This document shows, piece by piece, positions 18,536 to 54,989 of a stretch of 64,000 bases of DNA (positions within the stretch are counted from its first letter, which is position 1; each line of letters starts with the position of its first letter). The stretch covers positions 434,001-498,000 of the forward strand of contig NW_003314330.1 in assembly GCF_000143415.4 (NCBI RefSeq), read 5' to 3'. Source of the stretch: Selaginella moellendorffii (taxonomy: Eukaryota; Plantae; Lycopodiophyta). Made by a program: the position numbers and the translations under genes. The notes under the pieces are model-generated. The model worked only from the letters and a program-made list of their open reading frames with translations. It had not been told where the DNA came from and did no database searches.

Positions 18536-18775
18536 TGTAGAGTTGGAGAGATTTGCGGAAAAAGCGATCGATCTCCTGACAACCTGGGGGACTGGTTCTT
18601 AAAGATCGCGGTGGTTTAGTCAGACTTTGCGAGCATCTTCTCGCCGCGAAAGTCTAGAGTTGAATTTGACATTGGGATCGATCGATCGCCAGAGATTTAG
18701 TTCGTGTTGGAGTATGCTCTGGGTAGAAACGTTCCAATCGATTACAAACTCTCCCCCTCTTGCGGGTTTTTAAAA

Positions 18776-24639: not shown

Positions 24640-26988
24640 CTTTTTTGCCTTTCTTTTCTCTCCCCCACGAGGAGAGATTGATCGAATTCGTCTCTCGAGG
24701 GATAGAGAGACCACCGCGCTCTTTCCTTATTTAATTCGTGGGCGTGGACTCGGCCTCCTCGAAAAAAAAATGGTGGCAAAAGATTCTTCCTATATTTCTT
24801 TGGGAAATCAAACTCGAGATGATCATCGATCACAAACTCCAGCAAAAATTCCTAGCTCTAGACACGAAAACCTTTGCTCTCCTTGCCACAGTTGTTCCAA
24901 AGACTACACTCGAGAGCTACAGCCATGATAGCATTCTCGGAAACCAAAGTGGCCCTACTTTACTAGAATGTTAAAAAAGATGGGATTTTTCTCGCTTCAC
25001 CCCCTTGCTTTAAACTTGAAAGAGTTTTTGCTTGTCCATGTCTCTCATTCTTCTTTCCTTTTTCTTCTTCTTCTTCTTCGTTGTTTGTTTATCTTTTCCT
25101 CAAATTATTTGTAGATTGTGAGTTTACACCACTGTCAAAAAAGAATTCACCTCTTTCAGGTTCCTTGTGGATTTTTGTCTTGTAACTGGTAACTCGGGCA
25201 AAAACATGACGTGGGGGTAAGAATTTCCAAAAGGCATGACGTGGGGTAAATTCCAGCACACCAGCAGTTACACAAGTTCACACTGCCAAAAGCAATTCGA
25301 AAGCAGTGATTTTTATCTGGTCCCAAGAAAAGATCAGAGAGAGAGAGCAACTCCTTCGCTTGGATTTCCATGATTTCATCCCGTCAACATTTCTGTAGTT
25401 TGCATTACGCGGTTTGACAACGTAGTCCTCCCCACAGATGAATTTCATCTCATCTTCTCGAAGAACAAAGACAAAACTAGGCATCGTCGCCATCTCCGTA
25501 TTATATGTTTTCCTTGTTGCCAAGTCCGGCATCTTGTGTACTTGTGTGTAGCTTTTCGCGCAATGCATTTCAATTGCAAGAAGCTCTCCAGGAGATCTCT
25601 ACGAATTCTTAATGTCTTTTCTGTCTGGAAACATGATACACCCACCCATACACCACATACATTTGTTTAGCGCCTGCAGAACTTTATTCTAACAAATGCC
25701 GTGTCACGTCTTCCGCTGCTATGTGATCTTACAAATCTGACCATTTGCTCGTTTCGCTGTTCTAGAAAGCCTGGCCTATGTCTAGCATAGCCGGCAACAA
25801 AATTTCAATCCGAAAAGCCTAAAGTACTGAATGACTGTTTTGACCAATTTATATCAAATTGTTCCGTTTGTGCTTGAGAGTCAACTGCTGATCAAGGGAC
25901 GACGAGAAAGAAAGAGAAGCAAAGAAATGAAATAAAAAAGAGAAGAGAAGCTTCTGAAAGTTTGAAGGCCTAGACATTACGCAAGTTTGTTTGTGTGTCA
26001 TGTTCCTCGAAGATTGACATTGAGATCGAATTAGGGAGCCACAGCTCTATGGCAGTTGTGAAGTTCCAGATTGATTGAGATATCCAAGGCATGGCTATCT
26101 GTTCTTCCTCGTCTATCTCCCTCTCTCCTCTTTTCGCTCTTTGTGCATGGAGACATTCAAAGGTGGATGATTGCGATGCATCAGAAGTTTTCTATGAAAC
26201 ATGCCCCACTAGAGACAGCGAAACAAGAACAGAAGGTAATACAAACGTACAAGTACTTCAGACTGTAGAACATTCAGAAGGACGGGAAAAGAAAGAGGGT
26301 TTTCATCGCTAAGTTCAGAAACTTGATAGAGAGGAACGCCTCATTGTGTCGTTCTTTGGGTGGTACAGGTGATCCAACCTTTGTCTCTTTGCAGTGGATG
26401 ACTTGCCCTTCAAAGGGATATTTGCCTATGAGAGCAGCAAAGGTAAGCACACTCCAAAAGACAGTTAGTGTGTTTTTGTGGGTCAATGCTGTGATTTCAG
26501 CAACAAGCATGGCCAAAGGTGTCAAAGGCCATCGGGTCATGTAAGTTGGTGTCACCGGTGAGGACCATACCTTCCAGTCAAGCATAGTCAAACCCCACAT
26601 TTCAAGCTACAAGCTTTGGTTTTGTTTTGTCTATCACAAAAATATTCACACAAAATATGTATAGTTACATGGTAGATTGCACTTTGCCTCCTTTCTTCCA
26701 GTGATTGAACCATTTGGACACGGAAATGGGGCCTCCAGCTCTGAACAAGGAAAAACAAAAACCCAAATGTAATTCAGCAATTATCAAAAGGTCTAGGATC
26801 TGGGGATCTTTCTTTGTTAATATACAGACAGAAAATGGAGAAAAGAAGAGAGAAAACAAAAAAACGAGACAAGATGATCTAGTCTGTGGCTATAAAACAC
26901 AAAAAGCAGTCGAGCAAATTGCAAACGACGCATGGACACCATTCAGCCTGAAAAGTTAGACGCTAAAGAAGAGAGATTTGGTCACACA

Positions 26989-29815: not shown

Positions 29816-30930
29816 TTAGAAGCCAATCGATTGCCAGCCTTTCTTCTCCAGCGCCTTTCGCAAAGCCTGTGAGGTGTTCTTCAAGTTAGTCCACAAAACT
29901 AGATTTCCACCAAACTAATAGAAGAGTGCGCTTACTCTGATTCTCTTGCGATTAGCATCGAAATCCGACGATCCCACGCGAGAAGCCGACCTGTACTCAA
30001 CCAGCGATCGATTCCCAGGCGGGAACCAAAACTCGACATCGTCTACAAACTGGAAGGAAAAAAAAATAAAATTATAGCGTGAAACCAAACTCCGAGAAAA
30101 AAAAAGAAAAAAAACTTACACCCAGATAGGGAGATTGATACTCAACGTAGACGTAATCGTCAGTGTTCTTGACGATGTTTGGAGTATAGTTTTCCGGCTT
30201 GGTTGAAGATATCTGAAAGAAAAAATAGAATTTTTGAACAAAAAACAATTCTTAGAAGCTTACAACAGCGAGAAGCTCTTTCATGGCCTGCTCTCTGGTG
30301 GCGGGGTTTTTTCTTCCACGTCCATCTTCTGGATTATACGTCCTGTCACCACGTTTCCCATAAGCCAAGAAAAAAGGAAAAAAAAAGAGTTGATTTTATT
30401 ACCACGGAGGTACGTAGTGAGATGGATCGTTTGCTTCTTCAGAGGTTGAAATGCAATTCGGAGTTGGAGGGCACAGCGCAAGGGACGGCGGATTTTTTTG
30501 TACTCCAAGATAGTCAGGTCGTGTTCCACTGGGTTTTTGGAAATTTTTTCTAGCCTCTCATCGAAAGATGAACAAAAGATGAATACCTGAAGTTGAAAAT
30601 AGCAGCCAGAGATGCCAATCCGCTCGACTGAAGCAGCAAAGTTCTATAGAACAAGAACACCAATCAATCAAATCAATTGCAAGACAACAAGATCAAAAGA
30701 GAACAAAAATCCACAGTGACACGATCATTACCGTCTGCTAGAGCTGCTTTCATCGGAGCGTAAGATGATTGGATTCTTTGTGGGAGTGGAACCCCGTGAA
30801 CCGGACAGAGACGCTTGGCTCAAGCTTCGAAAAAAAAAAAGACAAAAAAGAAAAAATAAAGAAAAGAGACTGTGAGATACGCATGAAGACCCGAAAGGAA
30901 GAAAAGGAAAAGAGAAACAACCACAGCCAT
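29816..30930 (-). CDS. DUF1499-family protein, multi-exon
   Basis: Hand translation: PDYLGVQKNPPSLALCPPTPNCISTSE; DDYVYVEYQSP; FVDDVEFWFPP; VEYRSASRVGSSDFDANRKRI; ALRKALEKKGWQSIGF*. Start codon is uncertain. Confidence 0.8.
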
Positions 30931-31136
30931 GGTCTTTGAATCTTTGTTTCTCTTTTCTCTTTGTATAATGCGAAGAAAAATCATGAAGGAGCACTCACCA
31001 AGACAGAGATACGCAAGCCATCCCTCTTCTTCAATCGCCCAACAGATGGATATAGGGCAAACACCACACAACATAAACCTTCTCAAAACCTTAAAGCTTG
31101 GCAAATCTTTCCAGATAAAGTTTTCCAGATCTTTTT

Positions 31137-32978
31137 CTACAGCTTCTTCACAAGTAGAGGAGCACCATATACTGGTTTCATACTGACAGGACTTCCGGGA
31201 GCGTGGACGTAATCCTCAGCGAGCGTGAAGGAAAACTTGGCGAGCAGCAGCGAGAGGAGCAGCCTTGCCTCGATCAATGCGAAGTTCATGCCGAGACACA
31301 TCCGCGGCCCCGCTCCGAAAGCCATGAACTCGGATATGTCCTTGGTTTTCTTGTTGATGAAACGCTCGGGATTAAACTCGGAGACATCGTCCCCCCAATC
31401 TTCTTTGCTTTGGAGCAGCAGAGCCAGTGGACACAAGACTAGAGTTCCCGGAAGTATGGAGAACTCCCCGATTTCGTGGGCTTGATGGCACTGTCTCGTC
31501 ACGGTCGAAGCCGGAGGGAAGAGTCGAAGAACCTCGTGGATGATCCAGCCAACCTTCAGATCAAACAGGAGATTTAGTAAAATGGAGCTGCAAGAACACT
31601 ATAGAGAACTTACAACTTCGAGGCTTGAGAGATCTTCGGCACTTAGATCACGACCTCCACACCGTTTGTGCGCTGCGAAGATCTCGTCCCTGGCACGCTG
31701 CTGCCACTCCTGGTGGACCGAGAGCATGATCAGTGACCAAGTGAGCGTCAATGCGGTGGTGGAGTGACCCGCAAAGAAGATTGTCTTGCACTCGTCCAGG
31801 AGCTGGTCCATTGTCATCGTTGGCGACTTGTTCTCCACGGCCTCGAGCATCATGTCGAGGAGATCATACACAGGCTTGCCGTTCTCGTCAGGATTTCTGG
31901 TCTTTTCGGCCCAGCGGTTGCGAATTATATCTCGCAGCAGCGTGTTCACGTATTGCTCACTGCGCCGGAGGTGGAGATTCTCCCGTGTTGGCAGGAAACT
32001 ATTTCATCACAACCAAGTTTTCAGAGAAAAAATCGACTTTTTTTCGAAAGTTTTGCTCGTGAACGATCACCTGTATCCAGGTATAAGCCGCTTGTAGCTG
32101 TTCATGTAGAGCAGTCCCGTAGAGAGAAGCCTGTCCAAGCACTCGAAAGCAGCGTAACCAGTGTTGGTGCCTCCAATGGTTGCTCCAAACGACGCTCTTG
32201 TGATCACGTCCAAGGTTAGAGCCGCCATCTCTCTGTGAGCATCGATTCTCGTCGTCTCTCTCGAGCTCCATTTCCTGGCCAGATCTTCTCCAGCACCAGA
32301 CATATGCCGCATCAATCCCTGTAGAAGAATCGGAGAAACATTAGAAAAATCGGATTTTGTATTCATGGGTATCACCTTCAAGTATGCAAGCTTGAATGCG
32401 GGATTGAGAATTTTGCGCTGCTGTCTCCAGAAATCTCCGTCGGTGACAACAACACCTCTGCCAACAACGGCTCTGAGGATCTGGCGAGACAAATCGGCCT
32501 TGATGTAGGAAGAGGATCGAGACATAAGAACTTGCTTCACGAGCTCGGTATCAGCCACCAGGATTCGAGTCGTGGAGCCAAGCTCGTGAACTGAGATTCT
32601 CCCTGTAACAATATGGTGATCGATCAGATGAAGGGAACTTCAAGAACCAGAAAAGACTTCTTTTTTCTTGTGTTGAGCAAACAACAAACAGAGAGGAGTG
32701 ATACCATAAGTTTGCTGGAATGTAGCAAGGTCCGGAATAACCCTGAACTTGGTCGCGGCGTGGAAGCTGGTCTCAAACTTTGGCACCGAGTTGAAGAGCT
32801 TGTGAATCTCGGGGATGTTGCCGACGATCAATCGGAATGGAGGCCCTGGAATGCCCTGCTTGGCGTAGAAGCAGCGGAATCTCCAGGCGTGCCACAGGCT
32901 CCTCGCAGCAGGAGCGAGCAGCCAAACAACCAAAAACACACCACAAGAACATAGAATCTTCCACAAGAAATCTTCCAT
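31137..32978 (-). CDS. Cytochrome P450, CYP72-clan-like, copy A
   Basis: QGIPGPPFRLIVGN; WRQQRKILNPAF; ECKTIFFAGHSTT; EWQQRARDEI; EVLRLFPP; FNPERF; FGAGPRMCLG heme motif; short introns. Confidence 0.92.
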
Positions 32979-33395
32979 AGCCAAATAGTTAGATTGTGGG
33001 AACTTAGGTTAGCAACCTTATCTCAAATGTATGCCACTTGTCATGGGCTATGTTTGGTTGTATATAAAGAGATTTCATAACTTCTCAGTTTGTCAACTCA
33101 TTTGTACATTTTAGCAGTGAATTCCAACTACACATTGTTTGTAGTGACCTCTTATGCCATTTATGACTAGATGAAATAGATCACTTTTCACTTGTCATAT
33201 TTTCCACGTTGTGAGACTTTTCGTAGTACATTCAAGATCAATTTGCCACCATTATTTTCTTTCAAAAAAGTTGGGATATGTCTGCAAAGAAGAACAGTGC
33301 TGTGAGAATCACAAAAAATCATTTCATCAATCAATCATGCAGCTACTTAAAACTGAGAAACCTTCAAGCTAAGTTAAATCACCCAAATCCCTCCA

Positions 33396-34572
33396 TCACA
33401 GAAAGATGGTCTCCAATTCAGCCCCGTATTCCTCTTCGTCAAAAGCCTCCTGGAGCCTCCGCAGCTCGTCTGCTCTCTTCTGCTCTTCTTGAACTTTCAT
33501 CCTCGCGAAAGCTTCCTCTTGGTCTTTCCGGGCTTTCGCCTCGTCAGCCACCTCGTCCGGAGCTTTGGTCGGTTGATCCCTGCCGGACGGAGCAACCTTG
33601 GACGTAACCTCCCTCGCCAGCTCCTTGATCTTGGGAGTGACCACGGAGACGGTCTCCTTGATCTTGGGAAGAACGGCGGGAGGAGGAGGAGTTTCCTTCA
33701 ACACCGCGTCCTTGAAAGTCTTTGGAGCTTCCTTGACGGCCTCTATAACTTTGGCTACACCACTTAGAGCTTCCACCGCTGTTGAAGGCTGCTGAGCTTC
33801 CTCTGGAGGTGGCGGTGGCGGTGGCGGTGGCGATGGAGGCGAAACTTTGAACGTTGGAACTGGCTTCAAGCCTGGAGCTTGAGTTTGAGTCGATGGAGGA
33901 GGCTGCGGAGCTGGAGCTGACGCTGTTCTAGCGTAGTCAGGCCTGGAGACGACTGGATCCGGAGCCGATGGTGCCTTCATCAGACGATGGCTCGGTTTGA
34001 TCTCGTCTTTTCTGCCTCCCATGATCTCGACCTTGAGGCTTTCGGAGTGAACGTGTTTGGCTGCCGCTGTCGTCGGTGGAGCACCAGGCATTTCCGCAGG
34101 AGGAGACGGTAGAATTCTACCTGCAGTGCCTGCCGAGGTTGCTCCTTTGGAGATGGCCTCCGAAAGATCTGTGGTTCCTCGAGTTATGATGTCCGAGAGG
34201 TCCGTCGCTGTTGCTCCCTCGGTTGTGTACGCGGCAGCGATTCCCTCTGTTAGTGAGGCCGGAGGCGTCTTGTATTTACGGTACTTTGCGTAGAGGCCGA
34301 GCTGGAGTGCACCTAGAAGCACTCCCAGTCCGTTTGGAATCTAAACGAAAAACGATACGAAATGTTAGCTCCAGATGGAGTTAACGCTCGAAGATACTCA
34401 CGATAATGAACTTGTCTTGCTTGAGAATACCATACAATGCCCAGATTGTAGCTTTGTCAACACAACGAGAGCATGAAAGGCATGTATTCCACGCTCTTGG
34501 TTTCGATCACCATTTTCTGGAGAGGAGAAAGAGAAGTGAAGTGAGTGAGATCCACAAGACCGAGAGAAAATC
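33396..34572 (-). pseudogene. Duplicated 3' half of SWEET, frameshifted and with a premature stop
   Basis: Copy of 37544-38710 lacking the 5' exons; a micro-inversion at ~34453-34461 creates TGA and a 5-nt deletion. Confidence 0.85.
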
Positions 34573-34972
34573 TGGAGATCGTGCGAAGCGACGTCCAGAT
34601 TTCAGTAGCGGTCTTGGTGAGATCAATCAGCGGCAAGAATTCATCGCTCAATCCCAAGCCAATGACGGTGATGGCTTGCTGATTGCGAAAATCCCAATCT
34701 GATTGTAGCGTCTGCTCAGCGGGACGAGGCTCAGTCCTATCAACGATGTTCCACGCTCGTTTCGCAGAGAGGATCAGCCTGATTCTTGTCGCCCATGTGA
34801 AGAAATTCGTGCCACTGAATTTCTCCACCTTCTCTGTGGAAGCCACGAGAAATTGAGCAGCAGCCGGTGGCGGCGGCGGCGGCAGCAGCGGTGGTGGTGG
34901 GGGCGGCGGAGGTGGTGGTGGGGTTGAAGCGGCCATGACAGCAACGTCAAATCAACCAACCAGGATCGTCCC
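34573..34972 (-). mobile_element. Ty1/copia gag N-terminal fragment used as junction filler
   Basis: EKFSGTNFFTWATRIRLILSAKRAWNIVD...W...NQQAITVIGLGLSD...TATEIWTSL is the typical copia gag (DUF4219/Retrotran_gag_2) pattern; no LTR is present. Confidence 0.82.
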
Positions 34973-35260
34973 CGAAAAAAAGAAAAAATAAAGAAAAGAG
35001 ACACACATGAAAGTAGGCCCGAAAGGAAGAAAAGGAAAAGAGAAACAACCACAGCCATGGTCTTTGAATCTTTGCTTCTCTTTTCTCTTTGTATAATGTG
35101 AAGAAAAATCATGAAGAAGCACTCACCAAGACAGAGATACGCAAGCCATCCCTCTCCTTCAATCGCCCAACAGATGGATATAGGGCAACCACAAGTATAA
35201 ACCTTCTCAAAACCTTAAAGCTTGGCAAATCGTTCCAGATAAAGTTTTCCAGATCTTTTT

Positions 35261-37102
35261 CTACAGCTTCTTCACAAGTAGAGGAGCACCATATACTGGT
35301 TTCATACTGACAGGACTTCCGGGAGCGTGGACGTAATCCTCAGCGAGCGTGAAGGAAAACTTGGCGAGCAGCAGCGAGAGGAGCAGCCTTGCCTCGATCA
35401 ATGCAAAGTTCATGCCAAGACACATCCGCGGCCCCGCTCCGAAAGCCACGAACTCGGATATGTCCTTGGTTTTCTTGTTGATGAAACGCTCGGGATTAAA
35501 CTCGGAGACATCGTCCCCCCAATCTTCTTTGCTTTGGAGCAGCAGAGCCAGCGGACACAAGACTAGAGTTCCCGGAAGTATGGAGAACTCCCCGATTTCG
35601 TGGGCTTGATGGCACTGTCTCGTCACGGTCGAAACCGGAGGGAAGAGTCGAAGAACCTCGTGGATGATCCAGCCAACCTTCAGATCAAACAGGAGATTTA
35701 GTAAAATGGAGCTGCAAGAACGCTATAGAGAACTTACAACTTCGAGGCTTGAGAGATCTTCGGCACTTAGATCACGACCTCCACACCGTTTGTGCGCTGC
35801 GAAGATCTCGTCCCTGGCACGCTGCTGCCACTCCTGGTGGACCGAGAGCATGATCAGTGACCAAGTGAGCGTCAATGCGGTGGTGGAGTGACCCGCAAAG
35901 AAGATTGTCTTGCACTCGTCCAAGAGCTGGTCCATTGTCATCGTTGGCGACTTGTTCTCCACGGCCTCGAGCATCATGTCGAGGAGATCATACACAGGCT
36001 TGCCGTTCTCGTCAGGATTTCTGGTCTTTTCGGCCCAGCGGTTGCGAATTATATCCCGCAGCAGCGTGTTCACGTATTGCTCACTGCGCCTGAGGTGGAG
36101 ATTCTCCCGTGTTGGCAGGAAACTATTTCATCACAACCAAGTTTTCAGAGAAAAAATCGACTTTTTTTCGAAAGTTTTGCTCGTGAACGATCACCTGTAT
36201 CCAGGTATAAGCCGCTTGTAGCTGTTCAGGTAGAGCAGTCCCGTAGAGAGAAGCCTGTCCAAGCACTCGAAAGCAGCGTAACCAGTGTTGGTGCCTCCAA
36301 TGGTTGCTCCAAACGACGCTCTTGTGATCACGTCCAAGGTTAGAGCCGCCATCTCTCTGTGAGCATCGATTCTCGTCGTCTCTCTCGAGCTCCATTTCCT
36401 GGCCAGATCTTCTCCAGCACCAGACATATGCCGCATCAATCCCTGTAGAAGAATCGGAGAAACATTAGAAAAATCGGATTTTGTATTCATGGGTATCACC
36501 TTCAAGTATGCAAGCTTGAATGCGGGATTGAGAATCTTGCGCTGCTGTCTCCAGAAATCTCCGTCGGTGACAACAACACCTCTGCCAACAACGGCTCTGA
36601 GGATCTGGCGAGACAAATCGGCCTTGATGTAGGAAGAGGATCGAGACATAAGAACTTGCTTCACGAGCTCGGTATCAGCCACCAGGATTCGAGTCGTGGA
36701 GCCAAGCTCGTGAACTGAGATTCTCCCTGTAACAATATGGTGATCGATCAGATGAAGGGAACTTCAAGAACCAGAAAAGACTTCTTTTTTCTTGTGTTGA
36801 GCAAACAACAAACAGAGAGGAGTGATACCATAAGTTTGCTGGAATGTAGCAAGGTCCGGAATAACCCTGAACTTGGTCGCGGCGTGGAAGCTGGTCTCAA
36901 ACTTTGGCACCGAGTTGAAGAGCTTGTGAATCTCGGGGATGTTGCCGACGATCAATCGGAATGGAGGCCCTGGAATGCCCTGCTTGGCGTAGAAGCAGCG
37001 GAATCTCCAGGCGTGCCACAGGCTCCTCGCAGCAGGAGCGAGCAGCCAAACAACCAAAAACACACCACAAGAACATAGAATCTTCCACAAGAAATCTTCC
37101 AT
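35261..37102 (-). CDS. Cytochrome P450, CYP72-clan-like, copy B
   Basis: Same motifs and intron positions as copy A; three amino-acid differences seen. Confidence 0.92.
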
Positions 37103-37543
37103 AGCCAAATAGCTCAAGGGTCTCTCACTCAGATTGTGGGAACTTAGGTTAGCAACCTTATCTCAAATGTATGCCACTTGTCATGGGCTATGAAGATTGT
37201 TTGGTTGTATATAAAGAGATTTCATAACTTCTCAGTTTGTCAACTCATTTGTACATTTTAGCAGTGAATTCCGACTACACATTGTTTGTAGTGACCTCTT
37301 ATGCCATTTATGACTAGATGAAATAAATCACTTTTCACTTGGTCATATTTTCCACGTTGTGAGACTTTTTGTAGTACATTCAAGATCAATTTGCCACCAT
37401 TATTTTCTTTCAAAAAAGTTGGGATGTGGCTGCAAAGAATAACAGCGCAGTGAGAATCACAAATAATCATTTCATCAATCAATCATGCAGCTACTTAAAA
37501 CTGAGAAACCTTCAAGCTAAGTTAAATCACCCAAATCCCTCCA

Positions 37544-39457
37544 TCACAGAAAGATGGTTTCCAATTCAGCCCCGTATTCCTCTTCGTCAAAAGCCTCCTG
37601 GAGCCTCCGCAGCTCGTCTGCTCTCTTCTGCTCTTCTTGAGCTTTCATCCTCGCGAAAGCTTCCTCTTGGTCTTTCCGGGCTTTCGCCTCGTCAGCCACC
37701 TCGTCCGGAGCTTTGGTCGGTTGATCCCTGCCGGATGGAGCAACCTTGGACGTAACCTCCCTCGCCAGCTCCTTGATCTTGGGAGTGACCACGGAGACGG
37801 TCTCCTTGATCTTGGGAAGAACGGCGGGAGGAGGAGGAGTTTCCTTCAACACCGCGTCCTTGAAAGTCTTTGGAGCTTCCTTGACGGCCTCCATAACTTT
37901 GGCTACACCACTTAGCGCTTCTACCGCTGTTGAAGGCTGCTGAGCTTCCTCTGGAGGTGGCGGTGGCGATGGCGATGGAGGCGAAACTTTGAACGTTGGA
38001 ACTGGCTTCAAGCCTGGAGCTTGAGTTTGAGTCGATGGAGGAGGCTGCGGAGCTGGAGCTGACGCTGTTCTAGCGTAGTCAGGCCTGGAGACGACTGGAT
38101 CCGGAGCCGATGGTGCCTTCATCAGCCGATGGCTCGGTTTGATCTCGTCTTTTCTGCCTCCCATGATCTCGACCTTGAGGCTTTCGGAGTGAATGTGTTT
38201 GGCTGCCGCTGTCGTCGGTGGAGCACCAGGCATTGCCGCGGGAGGAGAAGGTAGAATTCTACCTGCAGTGCCTGCCGAGGTGGAGATGGCCTCCGAAAGA
38301 TCTGTGGTTCCTCGAGTTATGATGTCCGAGAGGTCCGTCGCTGTTGCTCCCTCGGTTGTGTACGCGGCAGCGATTCCTTCTGTTAGTGAGGCCGGAGGCG
38401 TCTTGTATTTACGGTACTTTGCGTAGAGGCCGAGCTGGAGTGCGCCTAGAAGCACTCCCAGTCCGTTTGGAATCTAAACGAAAAACGATACGAAAAGTTA
38501 ACTCCAGATGGAATTGACGCTCGAAGATACTCACGATAATGAACTTGTCTTGCTTGAGAATACCATACAATGCCCAGATTGTAGCGTTGACAAAGCTACA
38601 CAACGAAAGCATGAAAGGCATGTACTCCACGCTCTTGGTTTCGATCACCATTTTCTGGAGAGGAGAAAGAGAAGCAAAGTGAGCGAGATCCACAAGACCG
38701 AGAGAAAATCGCCAGAGAATTTGTTTTAATCACCTTGTTTGTTTGTTTTGTGTGAATCTTAAGCTCAGCTTTTGTGAGTGTTTTACCATAACCGACAGCG
38801 GTGCTGCATACATCATCGTGTTGATTATCACGTTGATTGATCCCAGAAACGTTGTCCTGTCGTCGCCCTCAAACGCTCCCAGCGTGATGGCGAAAGTGAT
38901 CGCACAAAAGAAGATCACAAACACAAGACTCCGCAAAACTTGAGTCTGTAGGAAAACCATAAGCTCAAGAACAAAGCAAAGTTGCAAAGAAAGAGAAACA
39001 AAGAAGAACTCGAGCTATGGAGCGTACCTTGACAGGCCATGCCGCGTAGTAGATAAAGATGACTAGATAAACCGCCTCAATCACAATGCCGGCCCCGTTG
39101 ATCGTGAGGACGAGGATGTTGTTCTCGCTGATGATCGGCAGGCCATAGAAGAACCAGAGCAAGCAATTCATGAGTGTACACACATAGGGAAACGCCGAGA
39201 ACCGCCCGGTATCCTTTTGTTTGTAGATGATCGAGAATGTCGGCCTGGAAAGCAGCGAAGAAACAAGATCGATTTAGGGGAATGGAGCCCGAGATACGAG
39301 AGATCTGGAAGCGATGCTTACAGCGGGGAGAAGAACATGATCATCGCCGTGATATTTCCTGCGAGGTCACCGAAATATCGCGGAATGAGATCGAAATCTC
39401 GCAATGTGGGACTGGATTCTTACCTAAGACGCCGAGCGCCACTGTTCCAGACCCCAT
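37544..39457 (-). CDS. SWEET: SWEET sugar transporter with very long Pro/Ala/Glu/Lys-rich C-terminal tail, multi-exon
   Basis: MGSGTVALGVLG/NITAMIMFFSP; FSAFPYVCTLMNCLLWFFYG; LVLTINGAG; MYAAPLSVM; VIETKSVEYMPFMLS; IPNGLG..LGALQL. Confidence 0.92.
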
Positions 39458-44204: not shown

Positions 44205-45142
44205 GTCTAATACTTATATTTCCTTTATAAGTGAAGATGACCTTTGGAATATTTACTTTTAATTCATAGACAAAATTGACAAAAAAAATTTCTTTTTAAA
44301 TATTTATCATGAATATTTAAGTTTAATCTGTAATAATAAGGAGGAGTTGCCAAACTTTTTGGGCTGCCAGATCTAGCCAATAGCAGTCATCTAATGGGAG
44401 GTAACTTGGTAAATATTGCTTTTTCACCGTGTATCGTTTTTTTTGCATGCGTCTTGTGTGTTCTTTTGAAATATTTTTGTGAGGTTTGGGCCGGCTAGTG
44501 GCATGTGACATAGGCTGGGCCAGAGGAGAAGATGTGAGTGACAACTACTTATTTGTGTGGCTCAAACAAAAGGGATAAAACTCTCCTTTTATCATAGCTC
44601 CTGTCAACTATGAAGTTTTTATTACAAGCATTGTTGACATTGTTAACATCATCTTTCATTTAGTTCATGGATTGTGAGCAAACATTTATGGATTTTAAAG
44701 AGCTCTTGACGACTCTTCCAACTTTGGCGTATTCTAACTACATTTAACTTTTTATTTTACACATGGATGCTTTTAATATCGATCTTGGAGATGTGTTAAT
44801 GCAAAAAATCCTAAGTGTGCTTTGTCAGTGCCATCCTATTGCATATATCAATCGTACATTACAACTAACAAAGGTGAACTACTCCATGACAGAGGAAAAG
44901 TGTTTAATAGTAGTTTGGGGTTTCGAGAAACTTTACATGGTTCTCAAACATTAATAAAAAGTGATCATGCTATAGTTATTTTATTATTGAAGCAAAAGAA
45001 CTTGGTTGATCGTACTATTTGGTTAGCTTTGAAGTTTTAAATATATGATTTTGATGTTTTTCATCACCTAAAGAGTTTTATAATTGATGCCATTTCTCAA
45101 GCTCCTTTTCCTTCTTCACTCTTTTTTCATATTTTTGACAAG

Positions 45143-47102
45143 TGTAAATGATTAAGTTCTCTATTCTATTTTAATCACTTAACTACACCTTTGACCATTT
45201 AGAGGAGTCTCACTCACACCCTCCATAAGTTTTATTCAGGAATTAGGGACATGTTAGCCTCGTGAATAACATCTATGTTACTTAACTTTTGCACTTGGTC
45301 CAAGTGTTCCATGTGTTCAATCACATAACTAACACCCAAAGGTACCACTGATATATTAGCCCGTTATGGTAAGGTGATACTCATTCACCTTTGTCACATC
45401 AATAGTCCAAGACCACCTACATTACCATCTCATCCTTTAAAGATTGGGCCATCCATCCATAAATGGTCATCATTGACCACACTTTAAAACCCTTATGATG
45501 TTTGAAGACATAAGGAACACCCTTCCCTAATGTCCCTTCTTTTATCCCCACTAAGTCCCTCTTCATCCATGGCCATGTTCACCAACATTGCCACTGAGTC
45601 AAGCCCCAAAAGCCCGACTGTTAAGTCCCACTGTCCTTTAAAACTTCCTCACCATGTAACCGTATCCTTGGTCATTACATCAAAGGACTGCTCCTTTCCT
45701 TTTCATAGTCTAGGATTTGGGACGACATTTTAAACACTATAGACCTACACAGGCTTTGTGATTATTTCCCCACCTTTCGCCGTTAAATGCCTTAGCCATG
45801 TGGCGAGAACAAGGTTCCAATGAGCCACATTAGGTGTTGTAAGCGACTAATTTTTCCATTTTACTTTAGTCACTTAACCGCACCTCCGACCACTTGGAGG
45901 AGTCTCACTCACAACCTCCGTAAGCCTAGTACTATTCAAACCTAAGGAACCCCAAATATCCCAAGACCTTTAACCGATTAGAAAAAAGGGTGCACTCTTG
46001 TTCATGGGCCCTTTCCCTCTATATCTAAACCCCATGGACCGTCTCTCGAGTCGTTTCCTTTGGTTGCTTACAACTAGATATCATGTAGGTAGTGCCATCC
46101 ACACTTGGATTGAGAGCATTGACCATTCAATCTCCCAGGGGAGCTAGAACTGGCTCTTGAACACTTCACAAGCTACCTTGTTTGTCTATCCGTATTCACT
46201 CTAGCCTTGGATGCCTTAATGGTTTTATCATCACCCAATACATGGATATAGCCTTTCTTGGTCACATTAGCCTCCCCTTGCCAAACTAACTCCAATGGAG
46301 TCCTCCCCCTATTATACTTTTGGAGCTCACCATACCTCTTCAGGTTTGGGAGATAATTGCTTTGGGCTTTCACTTTTGAACTTGGACTCGAACTCAGACT
46401 CAGACTTAGACTCGGTCTTAATCTTAGTCTTGGACTAGGTCTTAGACTCGGTTTTGGACTCGATTTTGGTGTCAATCTTTGTCCCGGTCTAGGTCTTGGT
46501 CTCGGTCTCGATCTCGGTCTCTTTCTTAGCCTCAACCTTAGACTCCATCTCATGTCTATCTCAAACTCTATCTTAGGTCCATCTTTGGACCCGAGATGGA
46601 GTCTGAGATGGACCCAAGATGCATTTCGGACTCCATCTCGGACTCCATCTTGGGTCCATCTCAGACTTCATCTTAGGTCCATCTGGGACTCTATCTTGGA
46701 CTCCATCTCGGATTACATCTTGGGTCCATCTTGGATTCCATCTTGGCCTCCATCTTTGGTCTATATCTTGGGTCTATATCGGACTCTATCTCGGACTCCA
46801 TCTTGGGTCTATATTGGATTCCATCTCAAACTCCTTCTCAAACTCCTTTTTGGACTTGTTTTTGACACTTCCATGTGTCATGACATTTGCCATGTGTCAG
46901 TCCTTTTTGTGTCCCTTTTTAGAGACTCATTTATTGATTACTTTGTGCTTGTCCCTTGAGCACTTTATTTAGAATTCCACTCCCAATCTTGACTTTCCAA
47001 GTCAGAGCCTTTAATCTAAATATGTTACGTTTGTTGGACTTCCGTTTTGACCTGAGACACCCTTTTTGCTCCACTTTGGGTCTTAGGGATTTGTGTCTTA
47101 TA
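45143..47102 (-). mobile_element. Older solo LTR of the 7.6 kb element family
   Basis: Colinear diverged copy of 353-2146 including the satellite; flanks ACAAG/ATGAG fit an ACGAG TSD after CpG decay. Confidence 0.85.
45838..46072 (-). mobile_element. Chimeric LTR: Cassandra 5' part joined to the large-element 3' end
   Basis: 45838-~45924 is near-identical to the large-LTR terminus (353-439); ~45925-46072 is the reverse complement of Cassandra LTR 12290-~12445; TG...CA ends. Confidence 0.85.
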
Positions 47103-49238
47103 ATGAGCTTATTATTCTAGCATTTGTGGAGTTTTTAGACAAGGATTCTGTGTTGTTGGCAGTTGTTATACTTGATATTTAGTGTTTATAAAGTGCATAG
47201 CAAAATTTACCTTTTTTTTAAGAGGTTCATGAAACTCAAAAGGTTAAACTATGGATATAAAAGCTTCACAATGGGTTTGAGAATTTTATATCATTTGTTG
47301 ATGATTTGCCATCTTAGCATTTACATTCTCAATATTGTCTTGAGGATGATATTCTTTAATTTAGGGATGGATCCTAATGATCATTTAAGGTTGGTGGTGC
47401 CCTTAATCTTTATTTCACACTTTCTCTATGCCTACCATAATTCTCCTATTCTAGGTGAGCATATGGGACATCATGGTGTGATTAAGAAGTTGTGTAAGTC
47501 TTTTTATTAGCTGAAAATGTGACGTAATGTTATCTGGTATGTATATAATTGCATTTGGTGCCAACCTCATAATACTTTCTTTTGTGTTGTGGAAAAACAA
47601 TTAGAGTTAATTAGAGTTTCCCATTCATTTAAGTTGGTGGTGTTTGGCCTTTTCCATGGTCAACTGTTAGTAATGAATATATCATTATTGCTTATAACTA
47701 CTTGACTTGCTGGGTGGACATTAGTGCTCTTGCTAGTGTGTTTATAACTACTATTAAATACTTCCTCCTCAATTGAGTGATGTTTTAACATTTCTATCTA
47801 AAGTGAATTTTTTCGGATAATGGTCCCATATTTATGGTCGAGGCGTTTCATATCTTAATGTCTCATCTAAATACATCACACTTTCATGAGCACTCATTAT
47901 TCACAGTCAGATGGTTTAGTGGAATAGCTTGTTTGAACCTTTAAATGGATGATTATGAAGTATATAAATTTTTAACATTTAAATTAGAATGGTTATTTGC
48001 CATCTCTTTGATATGCATATATTACAGAAATGTGGTGCTTCACTATATAAATTCTTATATGGTCATGATTCAATACTACCATGGAGTTAAGTTTACTTTC
48101 ACAATTGCCACAAATTGCTAATGCTAGGTTTTAGGAATTAATATTTAATGAGCATTCTTCCATTGATCCAAGCAGAGTCTATTAAATACTTGGGCCATAT
48201 ACAAGTGGGACAACAACAACACTACAACTCCCATCATTGTCCATTTGAAAAGTATAAAATGGATGATTTGGTGTTAATCCTTCAATTTATAGTACATGGT
48301 TTGTCTAAAAGGCATCTTGCTTAGTGGAAAGGATATATCAGGTGTTGTGGCAAGTTCAACCACAAGTTTATAAATTTTAGTGTAACATTAAACAAACTAA
48401 CCCTCCAAAAATTATGCATGTGTAACAATTGAAATACTTCATACAAAAAGATTAGGAACAATTAGCACCACTTACAAATCCACTAATACCTCTTCTTGAT
48501 GTTTCTCTAGATCCTAGTCTATCCACTAGAGAACCTTGACTATCTTCTATCATTTCGAAACAAGGGGATGATACTGTATACTAATATTAGTGTAGTGAGA
48601 TTTTGATACCCATTAAATTAGTTTTAATTTAGACCACTTGCTACTGTATAAAAGCTAGGGTTTTTAAGCTAATTGATATGTATATTTCTATATTCTATTT
48701 CCATATTCTATGCACTCACAATTGTTTAAAATTTCTTATTCTAAAATTAACTAATATCAATATCATCAATCATCAACTATTAAGTTAACTAGAAACTTAA
48801 ACTCATCAACCACTGCAACCAACTCATGAAGTGGTCAATCAACTTGTGAATTGATCAATGAACTCATGAATTGACTAATAAAATAATAAATTGATCAATT
48901 AACTTATAAAATGATAAATTCATAATTCAATTAAATGAAATGAAATGGTATCTTATCAAACTCAAAAGCTACATAAACTTATTGGGTTTGAAAATTGGCA
49001 CATTGCCTTTAGACAATTTGGTAGCCTTGTTTACATGTCAAACTATGGCAAGTACATCAACAAGTTTGTTCTTCAGATTCTTGCAGAAAATTTTGAATAG
49101 TTCTCTGGCTTCTAGTGGCTTTTTTTAATTGCAGTCTCATTTGGTATGCCTGACTTTTAATTACTTCTGTATACTTTTTGAGTATAAATCGAAGGAAACT
49201 TTCCCTCACTGTATTCGTATACTCTGCAGAAAACCATT

Positions 49239-49557
49239 ATGGCAATCAACTCATCCAAGGCTGTTGTAATTTCCACGGTGGTGCTGGTGCTGGTTCTATT
49301 GGGTAAGTGTATAATTCAGTGTGGAAGGATTGCCCTATGAATATATACAGGAGGTGCGATGCAAGCTGAAGCCGCAGGACAGAGAGCGCTCCTCCAGATA
49401 GGTGAGCGACCAATTTCCTGAAACTTTTGTTAATGATTTTTCTTTTGTAGTTTGCCCTGCTGTGTGCCAATACACTAGAGTTGTTTGCAGAGGCGTTCTG
49501 TTTAATGATACATGCTACAACGCTTGCAATCTGCCGCGGGGATGCCGACCAGTTTGA
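49239..49557 (+). CDS. Secreted 6-Cys Pin-II (potato inhibitor II)-like peptide, 73 aa, 3 exons (49239-49302, 49351-49401, 49451-49557)
   Basis: Spliced translation MAINSSKAVVISTVVLVLVLLGGAMQAEAAGQRALLQIVCPAVCQYTRVVCRGVLFNDTCYNACNLPRGCRPV*; two phase-1 GT-AG introns (48 and 49 nt); TATAAAT ~55 bp upstream. Confidence 0.8.
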
Positions 49558-49884
49558 CATCCAGATTGAAATTACTGAATAAAGCCGTTTATAATTGAGT
49601 ATACCTGATGGTAACTCAGTATTGAAGAACTTGAGCTTTGTTGAAGTCTTGTCGATATCATATGAATATGAAGCTTTTGCTGTATTTCTCAATTTGAAAA
49701 GGTAGCAGAAGGAAAATTTCCGAGTTCAGACTTTCTTTGCATGTGTACCTTGAGATTGTGATTCTAATGAGATAATCTTTGTGACAAGTCTCAGTTGGGA
49801 GGCTTGACTTTTCTGGTTGTAGCGTTTACAAAATCAGAGCGTTTGTGTTGCATTCTGTGCTTGGAGCGAAATGCTTGGTTGGAA

Positions 49885-50222
49885 ATGGCAATGAAATCAA
49901 ATATCATGGCAATTGCTGTGGTGCTGGTGGTTCTCTTGGGTATAATCTCGGCTTGAGTGAAGAATTCTTGTCATTCTTGTTATGTAACAGGGGTTGCGAT
50001 GCAAGCTGAAGCTGCGGGACAGCGGACGCTCCTCCAGCGACGTGAGAGATCAATCTTACATCAGACAATTTGATATAGCTTTGGAGATCTCTTCTAGTTT
50101 GCCCGGCAGTGTGCCAGTACACTAAAGTGGTTTGCAGAGGCGTTGCCAGTTAAAGCATGCATCTGAATAGGACTGCATGCTTTAACTCTTGCAATCTCCC
50201 GCGAGGATGCCGGCCAGTGTGA
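49885..50222 (+). pseudogene. Pin-II-like peptide copy 2 (in-frame stop from an 18-nt insertion)
   Basis: MAMKSNIMAIAVVLVVLLG|VAMQAEAAGQRTLLQR|LCPAVCQYTKVVCRGV[AS*]..LNRTACFNSCNLPRGCRPV*; splice sites intact. Confidence 0.78.
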
Positions 50223-50542
50223 CTTCTTCTTCTTATTGTTTATTATGCTGTAAGGAATCACAGCTAGCTTACAAACGAGGAAGGATAAGTTGAAGCACGA
50301 ATCCGGAAATGCTGGCCTCGATCTCCACTCTGGTTCCCGAGCAAGTGAGAGACTATCTACACCGTAACTCTAGCAGTCAAGTGCCACACGCACCACAATT
50401 TGGCAAAGCTCAAACCTTTTTGCGAAATTGCTCAAAAACGCTTGTTCCAGGTAAGAGCTATCGAGAAATTTTCCAAGAACCGGCCAATTTGCTGAAAATT
50501 GAACCTTCTGTTTCGATTAGAACTCGTGATTTTATTTTGTAG

Positions 50543-50638
50543 TTCGTGCTGCGGTGTGCCATACTCTAGAGTCGTTTCCAGAGGCGTTCTGTTTGATACA
50601 ACGCTTGCAATCTCCCACGAGAATGCCGACCAGTTTGA
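50543..50638 (+). pseudogene. Pin-II-like peptide copy 3 (exon-3 remnant)
   Basis: Frameshifted, partly deleted copy of exon 3 plus the 3' flank of copy 1. Confidence 0.7.
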
Positions 50639-50718
50639 CATCCAGAACAAAATTGCTGAATAAAGGAGTTTGTGAAACCTCCTAAAGAACCCAAAGATCA
50701 AAAGACAAGGTGGATGAT

Positions 50719-51005
50719 ATGTTTTTCTTTTATTACATGATGCTGGTGGTTCTCTTGGGTATAATCTTGGCTTGATCGTGAAGATTCCTTGTCGTTCTTG
50801 TTAATGTATCAGGCGTTGGGATGCAAGCTGAATCTCCTGGACAGCAGGCGCTCCTCCAGCGAGACAATTCGATGTATAACTTTGGAGATCTTTTCTAGTT
50901 TGCCCGACTGTGTGCCAGTACACTAGAGTAGTTTTCAGAGGCGTTCTGAATGTGAACGCATGCTTTAACTCTTGCAATCTCCCGCCAAGATGCCGGCAAG
51001 TGTGA
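50719..51005 (+). pseudogene. Pin-II-like peptide copy 4 (intron-2 donor deleted, one Cys changed to Phe)
   Basis: ...LVVLLG|VGMQAESPGQQALLQR; exon 3 CPTVCQYTRVVFRGVLNVNACFNSCNLPPRCRQV*. Confidence 0.72.
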
Positions 51006-51074
51006 TAAGACACAGTCCCACATCAATAAAGAACCACATTATTATGTTAAATATCAGTTTAGGGTTCTAGCAGC

Positions 51075-52100
51075 GATGGGCCGGAGGAGTGGTTTGCCGG
51101 AATGAAGCTCCGTAACGTGTTCTATCCAGTCCGGAACTTCCACTCCCCTCCAAGAAGTCGCACTGGACTGTGCCAACGGTGAGCCGAGGAGAATGACCGC
51201 CGCAGAAGCAATTGAGCTGCTTCGAGTGGGACAACCGTGTGGAACTTTGTGAGGAAGTATACCGGGTTCTCAACTTCTGGATTCGATGGTGGTGGAGGTG
51301 GCAAGAACGCAAGCTTGGGAAAGGCTCAAGCTATCCACCGGAAGCGGCAAGTCCGCCGTTGAGATGATAGGACGGTTGGAAGCGAAGTGGACAAGAGTTT
51401 GTCAAGACGTTAGCAGCGCAGTGTCAAAAATGAACTCGACCAGGAGTTATACTTGATCGAGCCAAAGATTGCCTGGAGCGATGGTCTGGTGCTTTACTTC
51501 TCTGCGAATACCGCGAGTTGGAAGTATATCTTAGTCATCGCTGCATTACCTGAGCGAAGCAAGGATCATCAAGTCTCCACGGACAGAGCACCTGTTTGAT
51601 ACCAGGGGAAAGAGCGTCACACCGGACAACTGAGCACCGCACTGGAGACTTTGAGGCCCGCCAAGAGCTTGCACCTGGAAGATAGCTTGGGTTACGGCAA
51701 AATCCTCGCACAGAACCGCTCTCAATTCATATCCTCGAGGGAGCAAAAACGGTATGAAGTTTTGGACCGGTGGATTGCCCAGTGATTGGCCAGCATCCAC
51801 TCACCATAGAGTATCCCAGCAAGCAAAACAGCCTTTCGTTGTGCTTGATTCCTGCTGTTGCTCTCTACTACCTCTCCTTGATTCCTGCTACTCCAACACC
51901 CTGTATCCTGAGTTACAAGACACACTTGGCCTTGCTCTTGAGCAGCATCCCATCCGTCATGAAGAACTTTTTCTATCGACTTCTCTATCTCGAGCTCGTT
52001 CGCTTGCTTGATCACAGCATTAAACCTCTCTTGGCTGTAAAATCTCTCCTTTTCAACGTCCAGGATGTCGAATACGATGAAGTAGTCCAGTATCCTAGTG
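51075..52100 (+). pseudogene. Possible decayed gene (weakly F-box-like N-terminus)
   Basis: GC-richer, coding-like sequence with stops; LP..E...RVLS..LPL...TVSR pattern spread across frames. Confidence 0.25.
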
Positions 52101-54989
52101 AATGTTTCAGCATGAAACGGCAGAATAATAGTGATCCATCTTGTCGTTTTGTAGTGTAAGCATAGCAGTTTTTAGACAGATATGGGGAAAGGGAAGGAAG
52201 AAGCACTGAGCTCCAAGGTTCTCGATTATGGAGGCCAAGTTCCCAAAGAAGAAGATTCTGGGAGTGGTTACGGGATGCGAGCGAATGCTGGCAATTCTTC
52301 CCCCAGAAGAAGTCGCAAGGATGACTGTGGGGCAATATCAAGCTTACCAGAAATGGCAGAGTATTTTGAGCAAAGTGATGTCACGGCTAGAGCTATGTTG
52401 ATTGAGTGCGTTCAATCAGAGGACATAGGGAGTTTGGTGTGCACTTCAACATTTTTATTGTGAGCAGTCATGGGCTAGGGAGATGAGCATCTTCCAGAAA
52501 ATGGTGAATTGTTGGTAGGGTCCTCATGAGAAGGCACAAAACTACATTGACTGGATGACAGTGTTCAGTGTCAAGCTGCAGAATATGAGGTCATCATTTT
52601 CTGCTGCAATAGGAGCTCTCATGATTATTGGTCTTAATGAGAAGTACGAAAGCCAAGATTGAGCTTCAAATGAATCATCTTCGACCAAGCTTGGATCAAG
52701 TCATTGCTAATATTCATCACTATGCCAACCTCAATGACATCTTCTCAAAAAAAGATGTTAGTGAATCCAAGGACAAAGACATGTTGGGAGGACATTCAAC
52801 AAAAGGTAGAAAACAGGAAATGAACAAAAATTTTGTAAACATGAAGGACCAATAGCAACCTTGGCAACAACTAAAGAAGATGATATAAGTCTATTGTTCC
52901 TGTATTTATGGATTTTTTGGATAAAGGTTCTATGTTGTCGTTGTTATTGTATTTGACTTTTAGTGTTCACAAAGTGTTGAACAAGATTTATTTTCTCTTT
53001 AATGAGGTTTGCAAGGTTTAAAAGATAAAGCTATGGATTCAAAGGCTTCACAAATCGCAAAAAACTTCATCCATCATTCACTAAAAAGTTGCTGGAACAT
53101 TATTCAAACTAAATGGCATTATCAACAATGTTATTGAAGCTAAAATATTTCACTGAAATGTAAGGTGTTACTCTGATATTAAGGTATTGATTATTCATAA
53201 TTTTTTTTTTCTTAAAACCATAACATATCAGAAAATTTAAGAATGGTCCATAGATTGATTTAATAATAATAAAATTTTAAGTGATGATAAATCACATTTT
53301 TTAAGATGGTAGCCTTTTGTACTGTGTCTAATGTTGTTTCAATGATATTTTCACCTATACATCATTATATTTATTCATATGTTTTCCATCTATCAATGCT
53401 GGTACTTTGTTTTCTTAGAACTTATCTTTTGCCTCTGTAGATTATGCTGAGTCGGGCAAATGTCAAAGCAAGAGTTGGCTTCTGGATAGTGGAGCCACCC
53501 ACCACATGATGTTTGATCGATCACTTTTCCAAAAAATAAGTTATAAGAAATTCTTTTACTCTGTGTGTACAGTTAGTAGAGAAGCTTTGTGAATAATAGC
53601 ATTTGGATCAATTTATTTTCCATGCTTTCAACTTGAAATCTCTAATGTTTTATTTGTGAAGTTAGCCAAGCATATGCTTTCAATTTCTCAACTTACAGAG
53701 CAAGGAATCTACACATTTTTCCATTGCATGGCTATAGACTTCATTTTCCATTGAACACAAATTGCTCAAGTGATGGCTAAGAATGAACTTTACTTCTGTT
53801 TTTCTTGGTCATACTCTTAGTGTAAATATTACTATCTTGCAGTTATGACACTTTTATTTGGGATATATAACGAGACACCTCAAATGGATTGCAGAGTACT
53901 TGATCTAATGCACATAAATTATGATGTGTGTGAGAGCTGTCTATGTGCAAAAATGAAGAAGAAACCATTAAAGAAAGCTACAACTAGACATAAATCAGTT
54001 TTAGATCTTGTTCATGTCAATATCTAGGGGCCTTCACTGGTAAAATTGTTCAAACAGGGCTTGATACTTTGCATAGATAGTATGTTTTTGTGGGTTGAGG
54101 AAGTGAACACAATAGTACACATTTCCTTCTAACAAAAGCTGTATCAAATAAAACATTGCATAGATAGGTACTAAACCTTCTATTTCATACTTACATATGT
54201 TTGGTTGTGTAGATTTCATATATATATAAGATGAAAAACAGTGAAATAAATGGGAAGATCAATCAACAAGATACATGATGTTTAGCTATAGTGAGATAAC
54301 AGAAGGTACCTATCAGGTTTAGATTTTCAGTCCGAAGGAAGTACTTATTTTCTTTTGAGAATCAATGCCAGCATACTCTATTTCATCAATTACCAATGAG
54401 AATATCAGATATTTTAAGTCGGTTTTAAGAAGTGGATATGAAGATGATATGGTCAAAGACACTACTACAGATTCATCACCACTTGTTACTTAGGAATCAC
54501 CACCACCACTTCCTATTGAACTGCCACCCAAAATTTCATCACAAACTCCAGAAACTCCACTCATTCCACACATGTTGTTAAGATGGTTTCCATTTATTTG
54601 GTTCTAATCACTTGGATTTTGATGCATGTTAAGAACACCTTTCTCAATAGGGAACTAAAGCAACTGGATTATATGCATAAGTGGAAAGGAACACTTTGTA
54701 AACTAACTATCTATCTATAGACGAAAGCAATCTGCAATGATATGGTAGAATGCTTATGCTTGGTTTTATATGGTAGGACATCACTAAGAATATGGAAATT
54801 TCTTCACCACACATTTAGCGCCACTACAATGTTATAGACTCTCTAAAGCCAAATCACAATCTGAGGGGGAGAAGGAGATAATGTAGCTAGAATATGGTTG
54901 GAGCTTTAATGTACCTTGCAATGGCAAGTAGGCCAATATAGCAGTGGCAACATCTCCATCTTAGGACACCTACATTATCTTTTAACAGA

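What the first reader, a model, noticed from the sequence alone, without database searches (positions are those of the whole stretch)
49239..51005. Hidden array of 3-exon secreted 6-cysteine Pin-II-like peptides missed by ORF calling
Seen: four tandem homologous units; copy 1 splices cleanly to a 73-aa prepropeptide with mature part CPAVC-x6-C-x8-CYNAC-x4-GC. Known: Pin-II (MEROPS I20) domains have CPxxC...C...CxNCC...GC...C with 8 Cys, and the first Cys of NCC pairs with the last Cys. Here exactly that pair is absent (NAC, early stop) while both reactive-loop disulfides are kept. Inference: a minimal ~36-aa, 3-disulfide inhibitor with P1 Ala (Thr in copy 4), suggesting elastase- or subtilisin-like targets, under birth-and-death evolution.
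Basis: partly seen in the sequence, partly recalled or inferred. Interest (0 to 1): 0.85.

Follow-up and report, generated by a model that had tools for sequence, protein, structure and literature searches.

The report
Spikemoss miniature Pin-II-like secreted peptide
A spikemoss makes a tiny secreted peptide, missed by gene annotation, that looks like a potato-type-II protease inhibitor cut down from four disulfide bonds to three; the gene and its splicing are real, but its activity is untested.

Summary
Copy 1 (49239-49557) is a real three-exon gene. An RNA-type contig skips both predicted introns with no mismatch, giving a 73-aa secreted precursor with a 34-aa six-cysteine core. Copies 2-4 are broken (in-frame stop; exon-3 remnant; lost donor plus Cys-to-Phe), so the 'P1 Thr' variant sits in a pseudogene. 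An intact paralog lies elsewhere in Selaginella moellendorffii, mis-annotated as SELMODRAFT_416968. Against it copy 1 shows purifying selection (dN/dS 0.23) and an unchanged CPAVC loop. Pin-II descent is likely: reactive-loop motif, cysteine order, a tail like published Selaginella Pin-II domains, a phase-1 Gly intron, and weak language-model hits to PF02428. It is not a canonical member: it has six cysteines, not eight, no Pfam hit, an extra intron, and no residues for the C-terminal hairpin. Two structure predictions disagreed. Best reading: a truncated three-disulfide Pin-II-derived serine-protease inhibitor with P1 Ala (0.55). Rivals: antimicrobial peptide, unrelated cysteine-rich peptide, Kazal-like inhibitor. 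The scan already noted the same family on other pieces of this genome (s1-366176, s1-410817). I found no paper describing it.

The parts
49183..49189 (+). TATA box of copy 1
   Evidence: TATAAAT, 33 nt before the 5' end of the RNA contig; the paralog in L001 has one at 9960
49239..49302 (+). copy 1 exon 1 (coding): N- and hydrophobic region of the signal peptide
   Evidence: hydropathy above 3; RNA contig covers it from 49222
49303..49350 (+). copy 1 intron 1, 48 nt, GT..AG, phase 1, splits a Gly codon
   Evidence: skipped in X6 contig; same position and phase in L001
49351..49401 (+). copy 1 exon 2: end of signal peptide (AEA) and short pro-segment with RALL (RxLx/RxxL) motif
   Evidence: dN/dS 0.09 against L001; cleavage sites are inferred
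49402..49450 (+). copy 1 intron 2, 49 nt, GT..AG, phase 1
   Evidence: skipped in X6 contig; conserved in L001 as 70 nt
49451..49557 (+). copy 1 exon 3 (coding): 34-aa six-cysteine core (49453-49554) and stop
   Evidence: pI 8.7, net charge about +3
49453..49467 (+). putative reactive loop CPAVC (P1 Ala if Pin-II-like)
   Evidence: motif matches Pin-II loop form (PMC8188708); first 12 codons show 4 synonymous and 0 non-synonymous changes against L001
49578..49583 (+). polyadenylation-type signal AATAAA in the 3' UTR (RNA contig reaches 49626)
49885..50222 (+). copy 2 (type B), broken: exons 49885-49939, 49991-50041, 50098-50222; in-frame stop; TATA box changed
   Evidence: a low-depth X10 contig has intron 1 removed and intron 2 kept
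50144..50161 (+). 18-nt insertion in copy 2 carrying TAA (50151); 14 nt of it are the reverse complement of 50174-50187
50543..50638 (+). copy 3 (type A, like copy 1): exon-3 remnant with deletions and frameshifts, no exons 1-2
50737..51005 (+). copy 4 (type B), broken: 5'-truncated exon 1, intron-2 donor deleted, third Cys replaced by Phe, loop CPTVC

Best explanation
Copy 1 is a working member of a small, unannotated Selaginella family derived from a single-domain (L-H type) Pin-II gene by loss of the fifth cysteine and an early stop that removes the C-terminal hairpin with the eighth cysteine. Shown: the gene is transcribed, spliced and under purifying selection. Inferred: the precursor enters the secretory path; signal peptidase cuts near AEA; a site-1-type subtilase cuts after RALL, releasing a 34-37-aa cationic peptide; disulfides 1-5 and 2-4 clamp the CPAVC loop and 3-6 ties the tail; the loop binds a serine protease like a substrate (canonical mechanism) at the Ala-Val bond, which suits elastase-, alpha-lytic- or subtilisin-type enzymes with a small S1 pocket. 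The array is a duplicated A-B pair of which only the first gene survives.
For: Spliced contig. Intact paralog with the same three exons and six Cys; dN/dS 0.23, Fisher p 0.002. By eye, the tail C-G/R-G..C-x2-[AS]-C-x-LP-x-GC matches the Selaginella Pin-II stretch ICGG..CATCC-x-IPQGC, and a six-residue C2-C3 gap occurs in their last domain (PMC4189545 suppl.). Phase-1 intron in a Gly codon of the signal peptide, a Pot II hallmark (PMC2259423). The top three named ESM Atlas clusters for P0001:1-70 are PF02428, 7 of 10 in one family, score 0.81-0.82, lead level only. C1-C6 and C2-C4 are the loop pairs (PMC3073943) and both are kept. Ala and Thr occur at P1 in known Pin-II loops (PMC8188708). RxLx/RxxL is an SBT6.1/SBT3.5 site (PMC13082318).
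Against: No Pfam PF02428 hit, no PDB sequence hit, no fold match; two AlphaFold models disagree, strands versus helices. Eight Cys are called fully conserved in the family, and two of the three strands come from the H-fragment, which is cut short here (PMC2259423). A phase-1 Gly intron in the signal peptide is common in plant secreted peptides (own knowledge). There is an extra intron. The loop is invariant, not hypervariable. The C5-C8 and C3-C7 pairing is recalled from solved structures, not tested. No activity data.
Confidence: 0.55

Rival explanations
1. Pin-II-derived scaffold that no longer inhibits proteases and acts as an abundant cationic antimicrobial or membrane-active peptide.
For: Net charge +3 to +4, pI about 9, 34 aa, three disulfides; the inferred 1-5, 2-4, 3-6 pattern is also that of beta-defensins (own knowledge); contigs with the L001 letters are very deep in X6; loss of the hairpin could destroy the inhibitor fold.
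Against: The putative reactive loop is the most conserved part; no defensin family hit; the 0.75-0.77 Atlas hits to gallidermin and scorpion short toxin are at noise level.
Confidence: 0.22
2. An independent lineage-specific cysteine-rich peptide family, for example a subtilase-released ligand, that resembles Pin-II by chance.
For: No HMM or fold support for Pin-II; extra intron; RxLx-type site as in RALF, GOLVEN and SCOOP precursors; no relatives outside Selaginella found.
Against: Loop motif, tail motif, cysteine order and intron phase all agree with Pin-II together; unprompted Atlas hits are PF02428; the genome has multi-domain Pin-II genes as possible donors (PMC4189545).
Confidence: 0.12
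3. A shortened Kazal-type inhibitor, with the reactive bond at Tyr-Thr two residues after the second cysteine.
For: Plant Kazals begin CPxxC-x6-CG with a preceding Val, as the L001 paralog does; Kazal connectivity is also 1-5, 2-4, 3-6 (own knowledge); Gln-Tyr-Thr is invariant; one model has a helix at residues 18-23.
Against: The Kazal signature GxDGxTY is absent; the last two Cys are 5 residues apart, not about 10; no Kazal hit in Pfam or the Atlas.
Confidence: 0.08
4. Copy 1 is itself a decaying, barely expressed duplicate with no role; only the L001-type paralog works.
For: Its contig has depth about 10 against thousands for L001-type contigs in the same run; three neighbours are dead; outside the first 12 codons exon 3 has dN/dS 0.76.
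Against: Open frame, all six Cys, TATA, polyA signal and both splice sites intact; exons 84-86% identical to L001 without gaps against 51-53% for introns and UTR. Contig depth is a poor measure of expression.
Confidence: 0.05

Closest known systems
Pin-II / potato type II inhibitors (MEROPS I20, Pfam PF02428), single-domain L-H type such as Arabidopsis AT1G72060
   Same: Signal peptide with phase-1 Gly intron; N-terminal CPxxC loop; order of the remaining cysteines; Gly before the last kept Cys.
   Different: Six Cys instead of eight; ends three residues after the seventh-position Cys, so no hairpin; 34 aa instead of about 50; second intron; no Pfam hit.
Multi-domain Selaginella moellendorffii Pin-II proteins (models 438273, 438274, 438284, 444521; PMC4189545)
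   Same: Tail motif ICGG..C-x2-CC-x-IP-x-GC, short C2-C3 spacing, same species.
   Different: Those are about 200-aa, multi-domain and cysteine-richer; this is a single truncated domain. Compared by eye only.
Natural cysteine-loss Pin-II variants: potato Pi7C/Pi6C (PMC3073943), Capsicum IRD-9 (PMC8188708)
   Same: Paired loss of cysteines in a Pin-II domain; IRD-9 remains an inhibitor.
   Different: Pi6C/Pi7C lose the loop-anchoring pairs and keep full length; here the loop pairs are kept and the chain is cut short.
Plant Kazal inhibitors (MEROPS I1; e.g. AT4G01575, Selaginella 414607)
   Same: CPxxC-x6-C start, three-disulfide 1-5, 2-4, 3-6 pattern.
   Different: No GxDGxTY motif, different spacing in the second half.
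SELMODRAFT_416968 (EFJ22131.1, UniRef D8S0Y7)
   Same: Its first 70 aa are an intact paralog, 79% identical in the core, same exons.
   Different: The public model runs past the true stop into 128 unrelated residues and is labelled hypothetical; the short product is in no database searched.

Membership tests
Pin-II (I20) | Reactive loop C-P/T-x-x-C | tested here: met
   CPAVC in copy 1, copy 2 and L001; loop form per PMC8188708
Pin-II (I20) | Eight conserved cysteines, four disulfides | tested here: not met
   Six Cys; fifth replaced by Ala/Ser, eighth removed by the stop; PMC2259423
Pin-II (I20) | Order and spacing of the remaining cysteines (L-H type) | tested here: met
   By-eye comparison with the published alignment; no score computed because paper sequences have no reference
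Pin-II (I20) | Phase-1 intron splitting a Gly codon in the signal peptide | tested here: met
   Copy 1, copy 2, L001; PMC2259423
Pin-II (I20) | Two-exon gene | tested here: not met
   Three exons, second intron confirmed in RNA; the rule was drawn from angiosperms only
Pin-II (I20) | Match to Pfam PF02428 | tested here: not met
   No hit for exon 3, P0001 or P0001:1-70; Atlas feature hits 0.81-0.82 are lead level
Pin-II (I20) | Three-stranded sheet fold opposite the loop | tested here: inconclusive
   Models disagree, pTM 0.36 and 0.43; no fold match at this length
Pin-II (I20) | Serine-protease inhibition, disulfide map | not testable with these tools
   Needs the peptide
Kazal (I1) | CPxxC-x6-C start as in plant Kazals | tested here: met
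   Published alignment, by eye
Kazal (I1) | GxDGxTY signature after the third Cys and about 10 residues before the last Cys | tested here: not met
   Absent; five residues
Kazal (I1) | Match to Pfam Kazal models | tested here: not met
Plant defensin / other Pfam cysteine-rich peptide families | Family profile match | tested here: not met
   Only yeast metallothionein at E 0.3-3

The most novel reading that the evidence does not exclude
The three-disulfide peptide is not a late truncation but the surviving ancestral core of Pin-II, and with its Kazal-like first half and shared 1-5, 2-4, 3-6 pairing it links the I20 and I1 inhibitor families; it would also be the smallest natural folded Pin-II inhibitor.
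Probability: 0.07. Interest if true: 0.78.

Novelty: new variant of a known kind. Interest (0 to 1): 0.47.

Why it matters
If it inhibits proteases, it shows that a Pin-II loop works on a 34-37-aa, three-disulfide frame without the hairpin thought to be structural, a natural minimal scaffold that is easy to synthesise and test. It comes from lycophytes, the earliest-branching group known to have Pin-II (PMC4189545), so it bears on how the family began. It also corrects annotation: an apparently very abundant transcript family is absent from the protein databases searched or buried in a false fusion model.

Tried and rejected
Pfam scans of exon 3 and of P0001 pieces: no Pin-II, Kazal or defensin hit. 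PDB sequence search: none. Word-index searches covering candidates of 28-89, 39-122 and 109-346 aa: only P0001; these need three shared 5-mers, so they do not reach distant kin. Full HMMER search: P0001 plus two repetitive chance hits, P0002 and P0003, rejected. Metagenome and prokaryote genome scans: none. AlphaFold twice, with 3-4 sequences: inconsistent; Foldseek, VIA-align and Atlas shape searches uninformative. Atlas features on the 34-aa core alone: noise. Alternative copy-1 splices (74-aa form with acceptor 49354 is 73 versus 72-aa variants, donors 49306/49308) are not what the RNA shows. Removing the copy-2 insertion as an intron, or a cryptic donor in copy 4, would need introns far below the roughly 50 nt seen here; rejected. 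L001 as the allelic locus: rejected, its neighbours (papain, chalcone isomerase, SAUR, P450) are not in the window. Literature searches found no description of this short form. Following the operators' note, the joined spliced model was not sent to any search tool: exon 3 was searched by reference (once with the in-frame intron before it, to widen the length range), and the public record P0001 stood in for the full precursor. Sequences from paper supplements were not typed in, so Pin-II and Kazal comparisons are by eye.

Full report
Observation. The stretch holds four homologous units. In run X6 one 322-nt contig lies on 49222-49626 with no mismatch and skips both introns. The tool only guesses that X6 is RNA, but a contig lacking both introns is a spliced transcript, and the DNA-type run X1 shows neither joint. 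A TATA box at 49183 and AATAAA at 49578 frame the gene. The core is 34 aa with Cys at 1, 5, 12, 21, 25 and 31, pI 8.7.

The other copies are dead. Copy 2 has an 18-nt insertion with an in-frame TAA and TACA for TATA; a low-depth X10 contig shows it with intron 1 out and intron 2 in. Copy 3 is a frameshifted exon-3 remnant. Copy 4 lacks most of exon 1 and the second donor and has Phe for the third Cys. Copies 1 and 3 share one 3' end type, copies 2 and 4 another, so the array is a duplicated A-B pair. One X1 contig joins 49692 to 50741, dropping copies 2 and 3; this is another haplotype or another locus. Birth-and-death turnover fits, but P1 Thr of copy 4 says nothing about function.

Organism and paralog. 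The only real database hit is P0001, SELMODRAFT_416968 of Selaginella moellendorffii. Its locus L001 carries an intact 71-aa paralog with the same three exons and intron phases; the public model overshoots the stop to 198 aa. No short product is on record. Four X6 contigs at word depth 3,000-18,500 differ from the window by 2, 3, 4 and 4 letters, exactly the window-versus-L001 counts, so an L001-type gene is probably very highly expressed; contig depth is a poor measure, so this is suggestive only. Copy 1 and L001 are 84-86% identical in exons 2-3 without gaps and 51-53% in introns and UTR; dN/dS is 0.23 (p 0.002), and the first 12 codons of the core show 4 synonymous and no replacement changes. 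That X6 holds both sequences letter for letter makes S. moellendorffii the likely source of the window.

What it is related to. For Pin-II: the CPxxC loop opens the domain as in single-domain forms; the tail matches, by eye, the Selaginella Pin-II stretch ICGG..CATCC-x-IPQGC with Ala or Ser for the first Cys of CC (PMC4189545 supplement); intron 1 is phase 1 inside a Gly codon of the signal peptide, a family hallmark (PMC2259423); and the three best named ESM Atlas clusters for P0001:1-70 are PF02428, though at 0.81-0.82, lead level. The loop pairs C1-C6 and C2-C4 (PMC3073943) are kept. Against: no Pfam, PDB or fold hit, two conflicting AlphaFold models, an extra intron, and loss of most of the H-fragment that supplies two of three strands. 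Plant Kazals share the opening CPxxC-x6-CG and, from memory, the same 1-5, 2-4, 3-6 pairing, but their GxDGxTY motif and tail spacing are missing. So it fails two defining Pin-II tests and is filed as a Pin-II-derived variant, not a canonical member.

How it most likely works. Shown: transcription, splicing, hydrophobic N-terminus, selection on the loop. Inferred: secretion; signal cleavage near AEA; cleavage after RALL, which fits the RxLx/RxxL site of SBT6.1 and SBT3.5 (PMC13082318); release of a 34-37-aa peptide whose loop, clamped by two disulfides, binds a serine protease as a slow substrate at Ala-Val. Ala at P1 is known in the family with no target assigned (PMC8188708); elastase- or subtilisin-type enzymes are the reasonable guess. 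The loop is constant in both intact genes, unlike the positively selected P1 of solanaceous Pin-II, which points to one conserved target, microbial or the plant's own; two genes are a thin sample. I put this at 0.55, against a cationic antimicrobial role (0.22), an unrelated peptide family (0.12), Kazal-like (0.08) and a functionless copy 1 (0.05).

Novelty. Pin-II in Selaginella is published, as four multi-domain proteins (PMC4189545), and cysteine-loss variants are known in potato and pepper (PMC3073943, PMC8188708), but those lose other pairs and keep full length. I found no description of a truncated three-disulfide single domain. First readers of this scan flagged the same family on other pieces (s1-366176, s1-410817), unchecked by me. 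Verdict: real gene, new variant of a known kind, interest 0.47.

Limits. As the operators required, the joined model was translated only in local scripts and never searched; exon 3 was searched by reference and P0001 served for the whole precursor. Paper sequences were not typed in, so those comparisons are by eye.

Noticed in passing
window 50144-50161: The insertion that kills copy 2 contains 14 nt that are the reverse complement of 50174-50187, a templated inverted insertion as left by template switching or microhomology-mediated repair.
   Followed up: partly
L001 10001-11009: Public model SELMODRAFT_416968 is a false fusion: true gene ends at 10338 (71 aa); the model splices on into downstream sequence, and UniRef labels it a VDE lipocalin domain protein.
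   Followed up: yes
window 51071-52104 and L001 10414-11702: Copy 4 and L001 share patches of 3' flank (68-87% identical, part inverted), suggesting segmental or transposon-borne duplication of the type-B gene.
   Followed up: partly
window 49692-50741 and 50919-50984: DNA run X1 has contigs that skip copies 2-3 and delete 64 nt of a copy-4-like exon 3: structural polymorphism or further paralogous loci.
   Followed up: no
window 16766-20668: Head-to-head pair of kiwellin (KWL1) ectodomain kinases, Pfam-confirmed; already followed up as s1-402639.
   Followed up: partly
window 22115-24714 (-): Exons of a respiratory burst NADPH oxidase gene (PF08414, PF01794).
   Followed up: no
window 30844-34572 and 34976-38710: Recent 3.7-kb tandem duplication (97% identical) with 303-308-aa ORFs lacking a clear Pfam family and a copia gag fragment at 34457-34936 between the units.
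   Followed up: no
window 352-2146, 6182-7973, 45140-47098: Three copies of a repeat with internal 12- and 23-nt tandem units (93% and about 70% identical), probably LTR-retroelement parts.
   Followed up: no
window 48816-48935: Degenerate 20-nt tandem repeat, AT-rich, about 300 nt upstream of copy 1.
   Followed up: no
window 49372-49401: The pro-segment ending (AAG..R..LQ.VC) resembles by eye the start of the multi-domain Selaginella Pin-II proteins (AAGSHRLQVC) in the PMC4189545 alignment.
   Followed up: no
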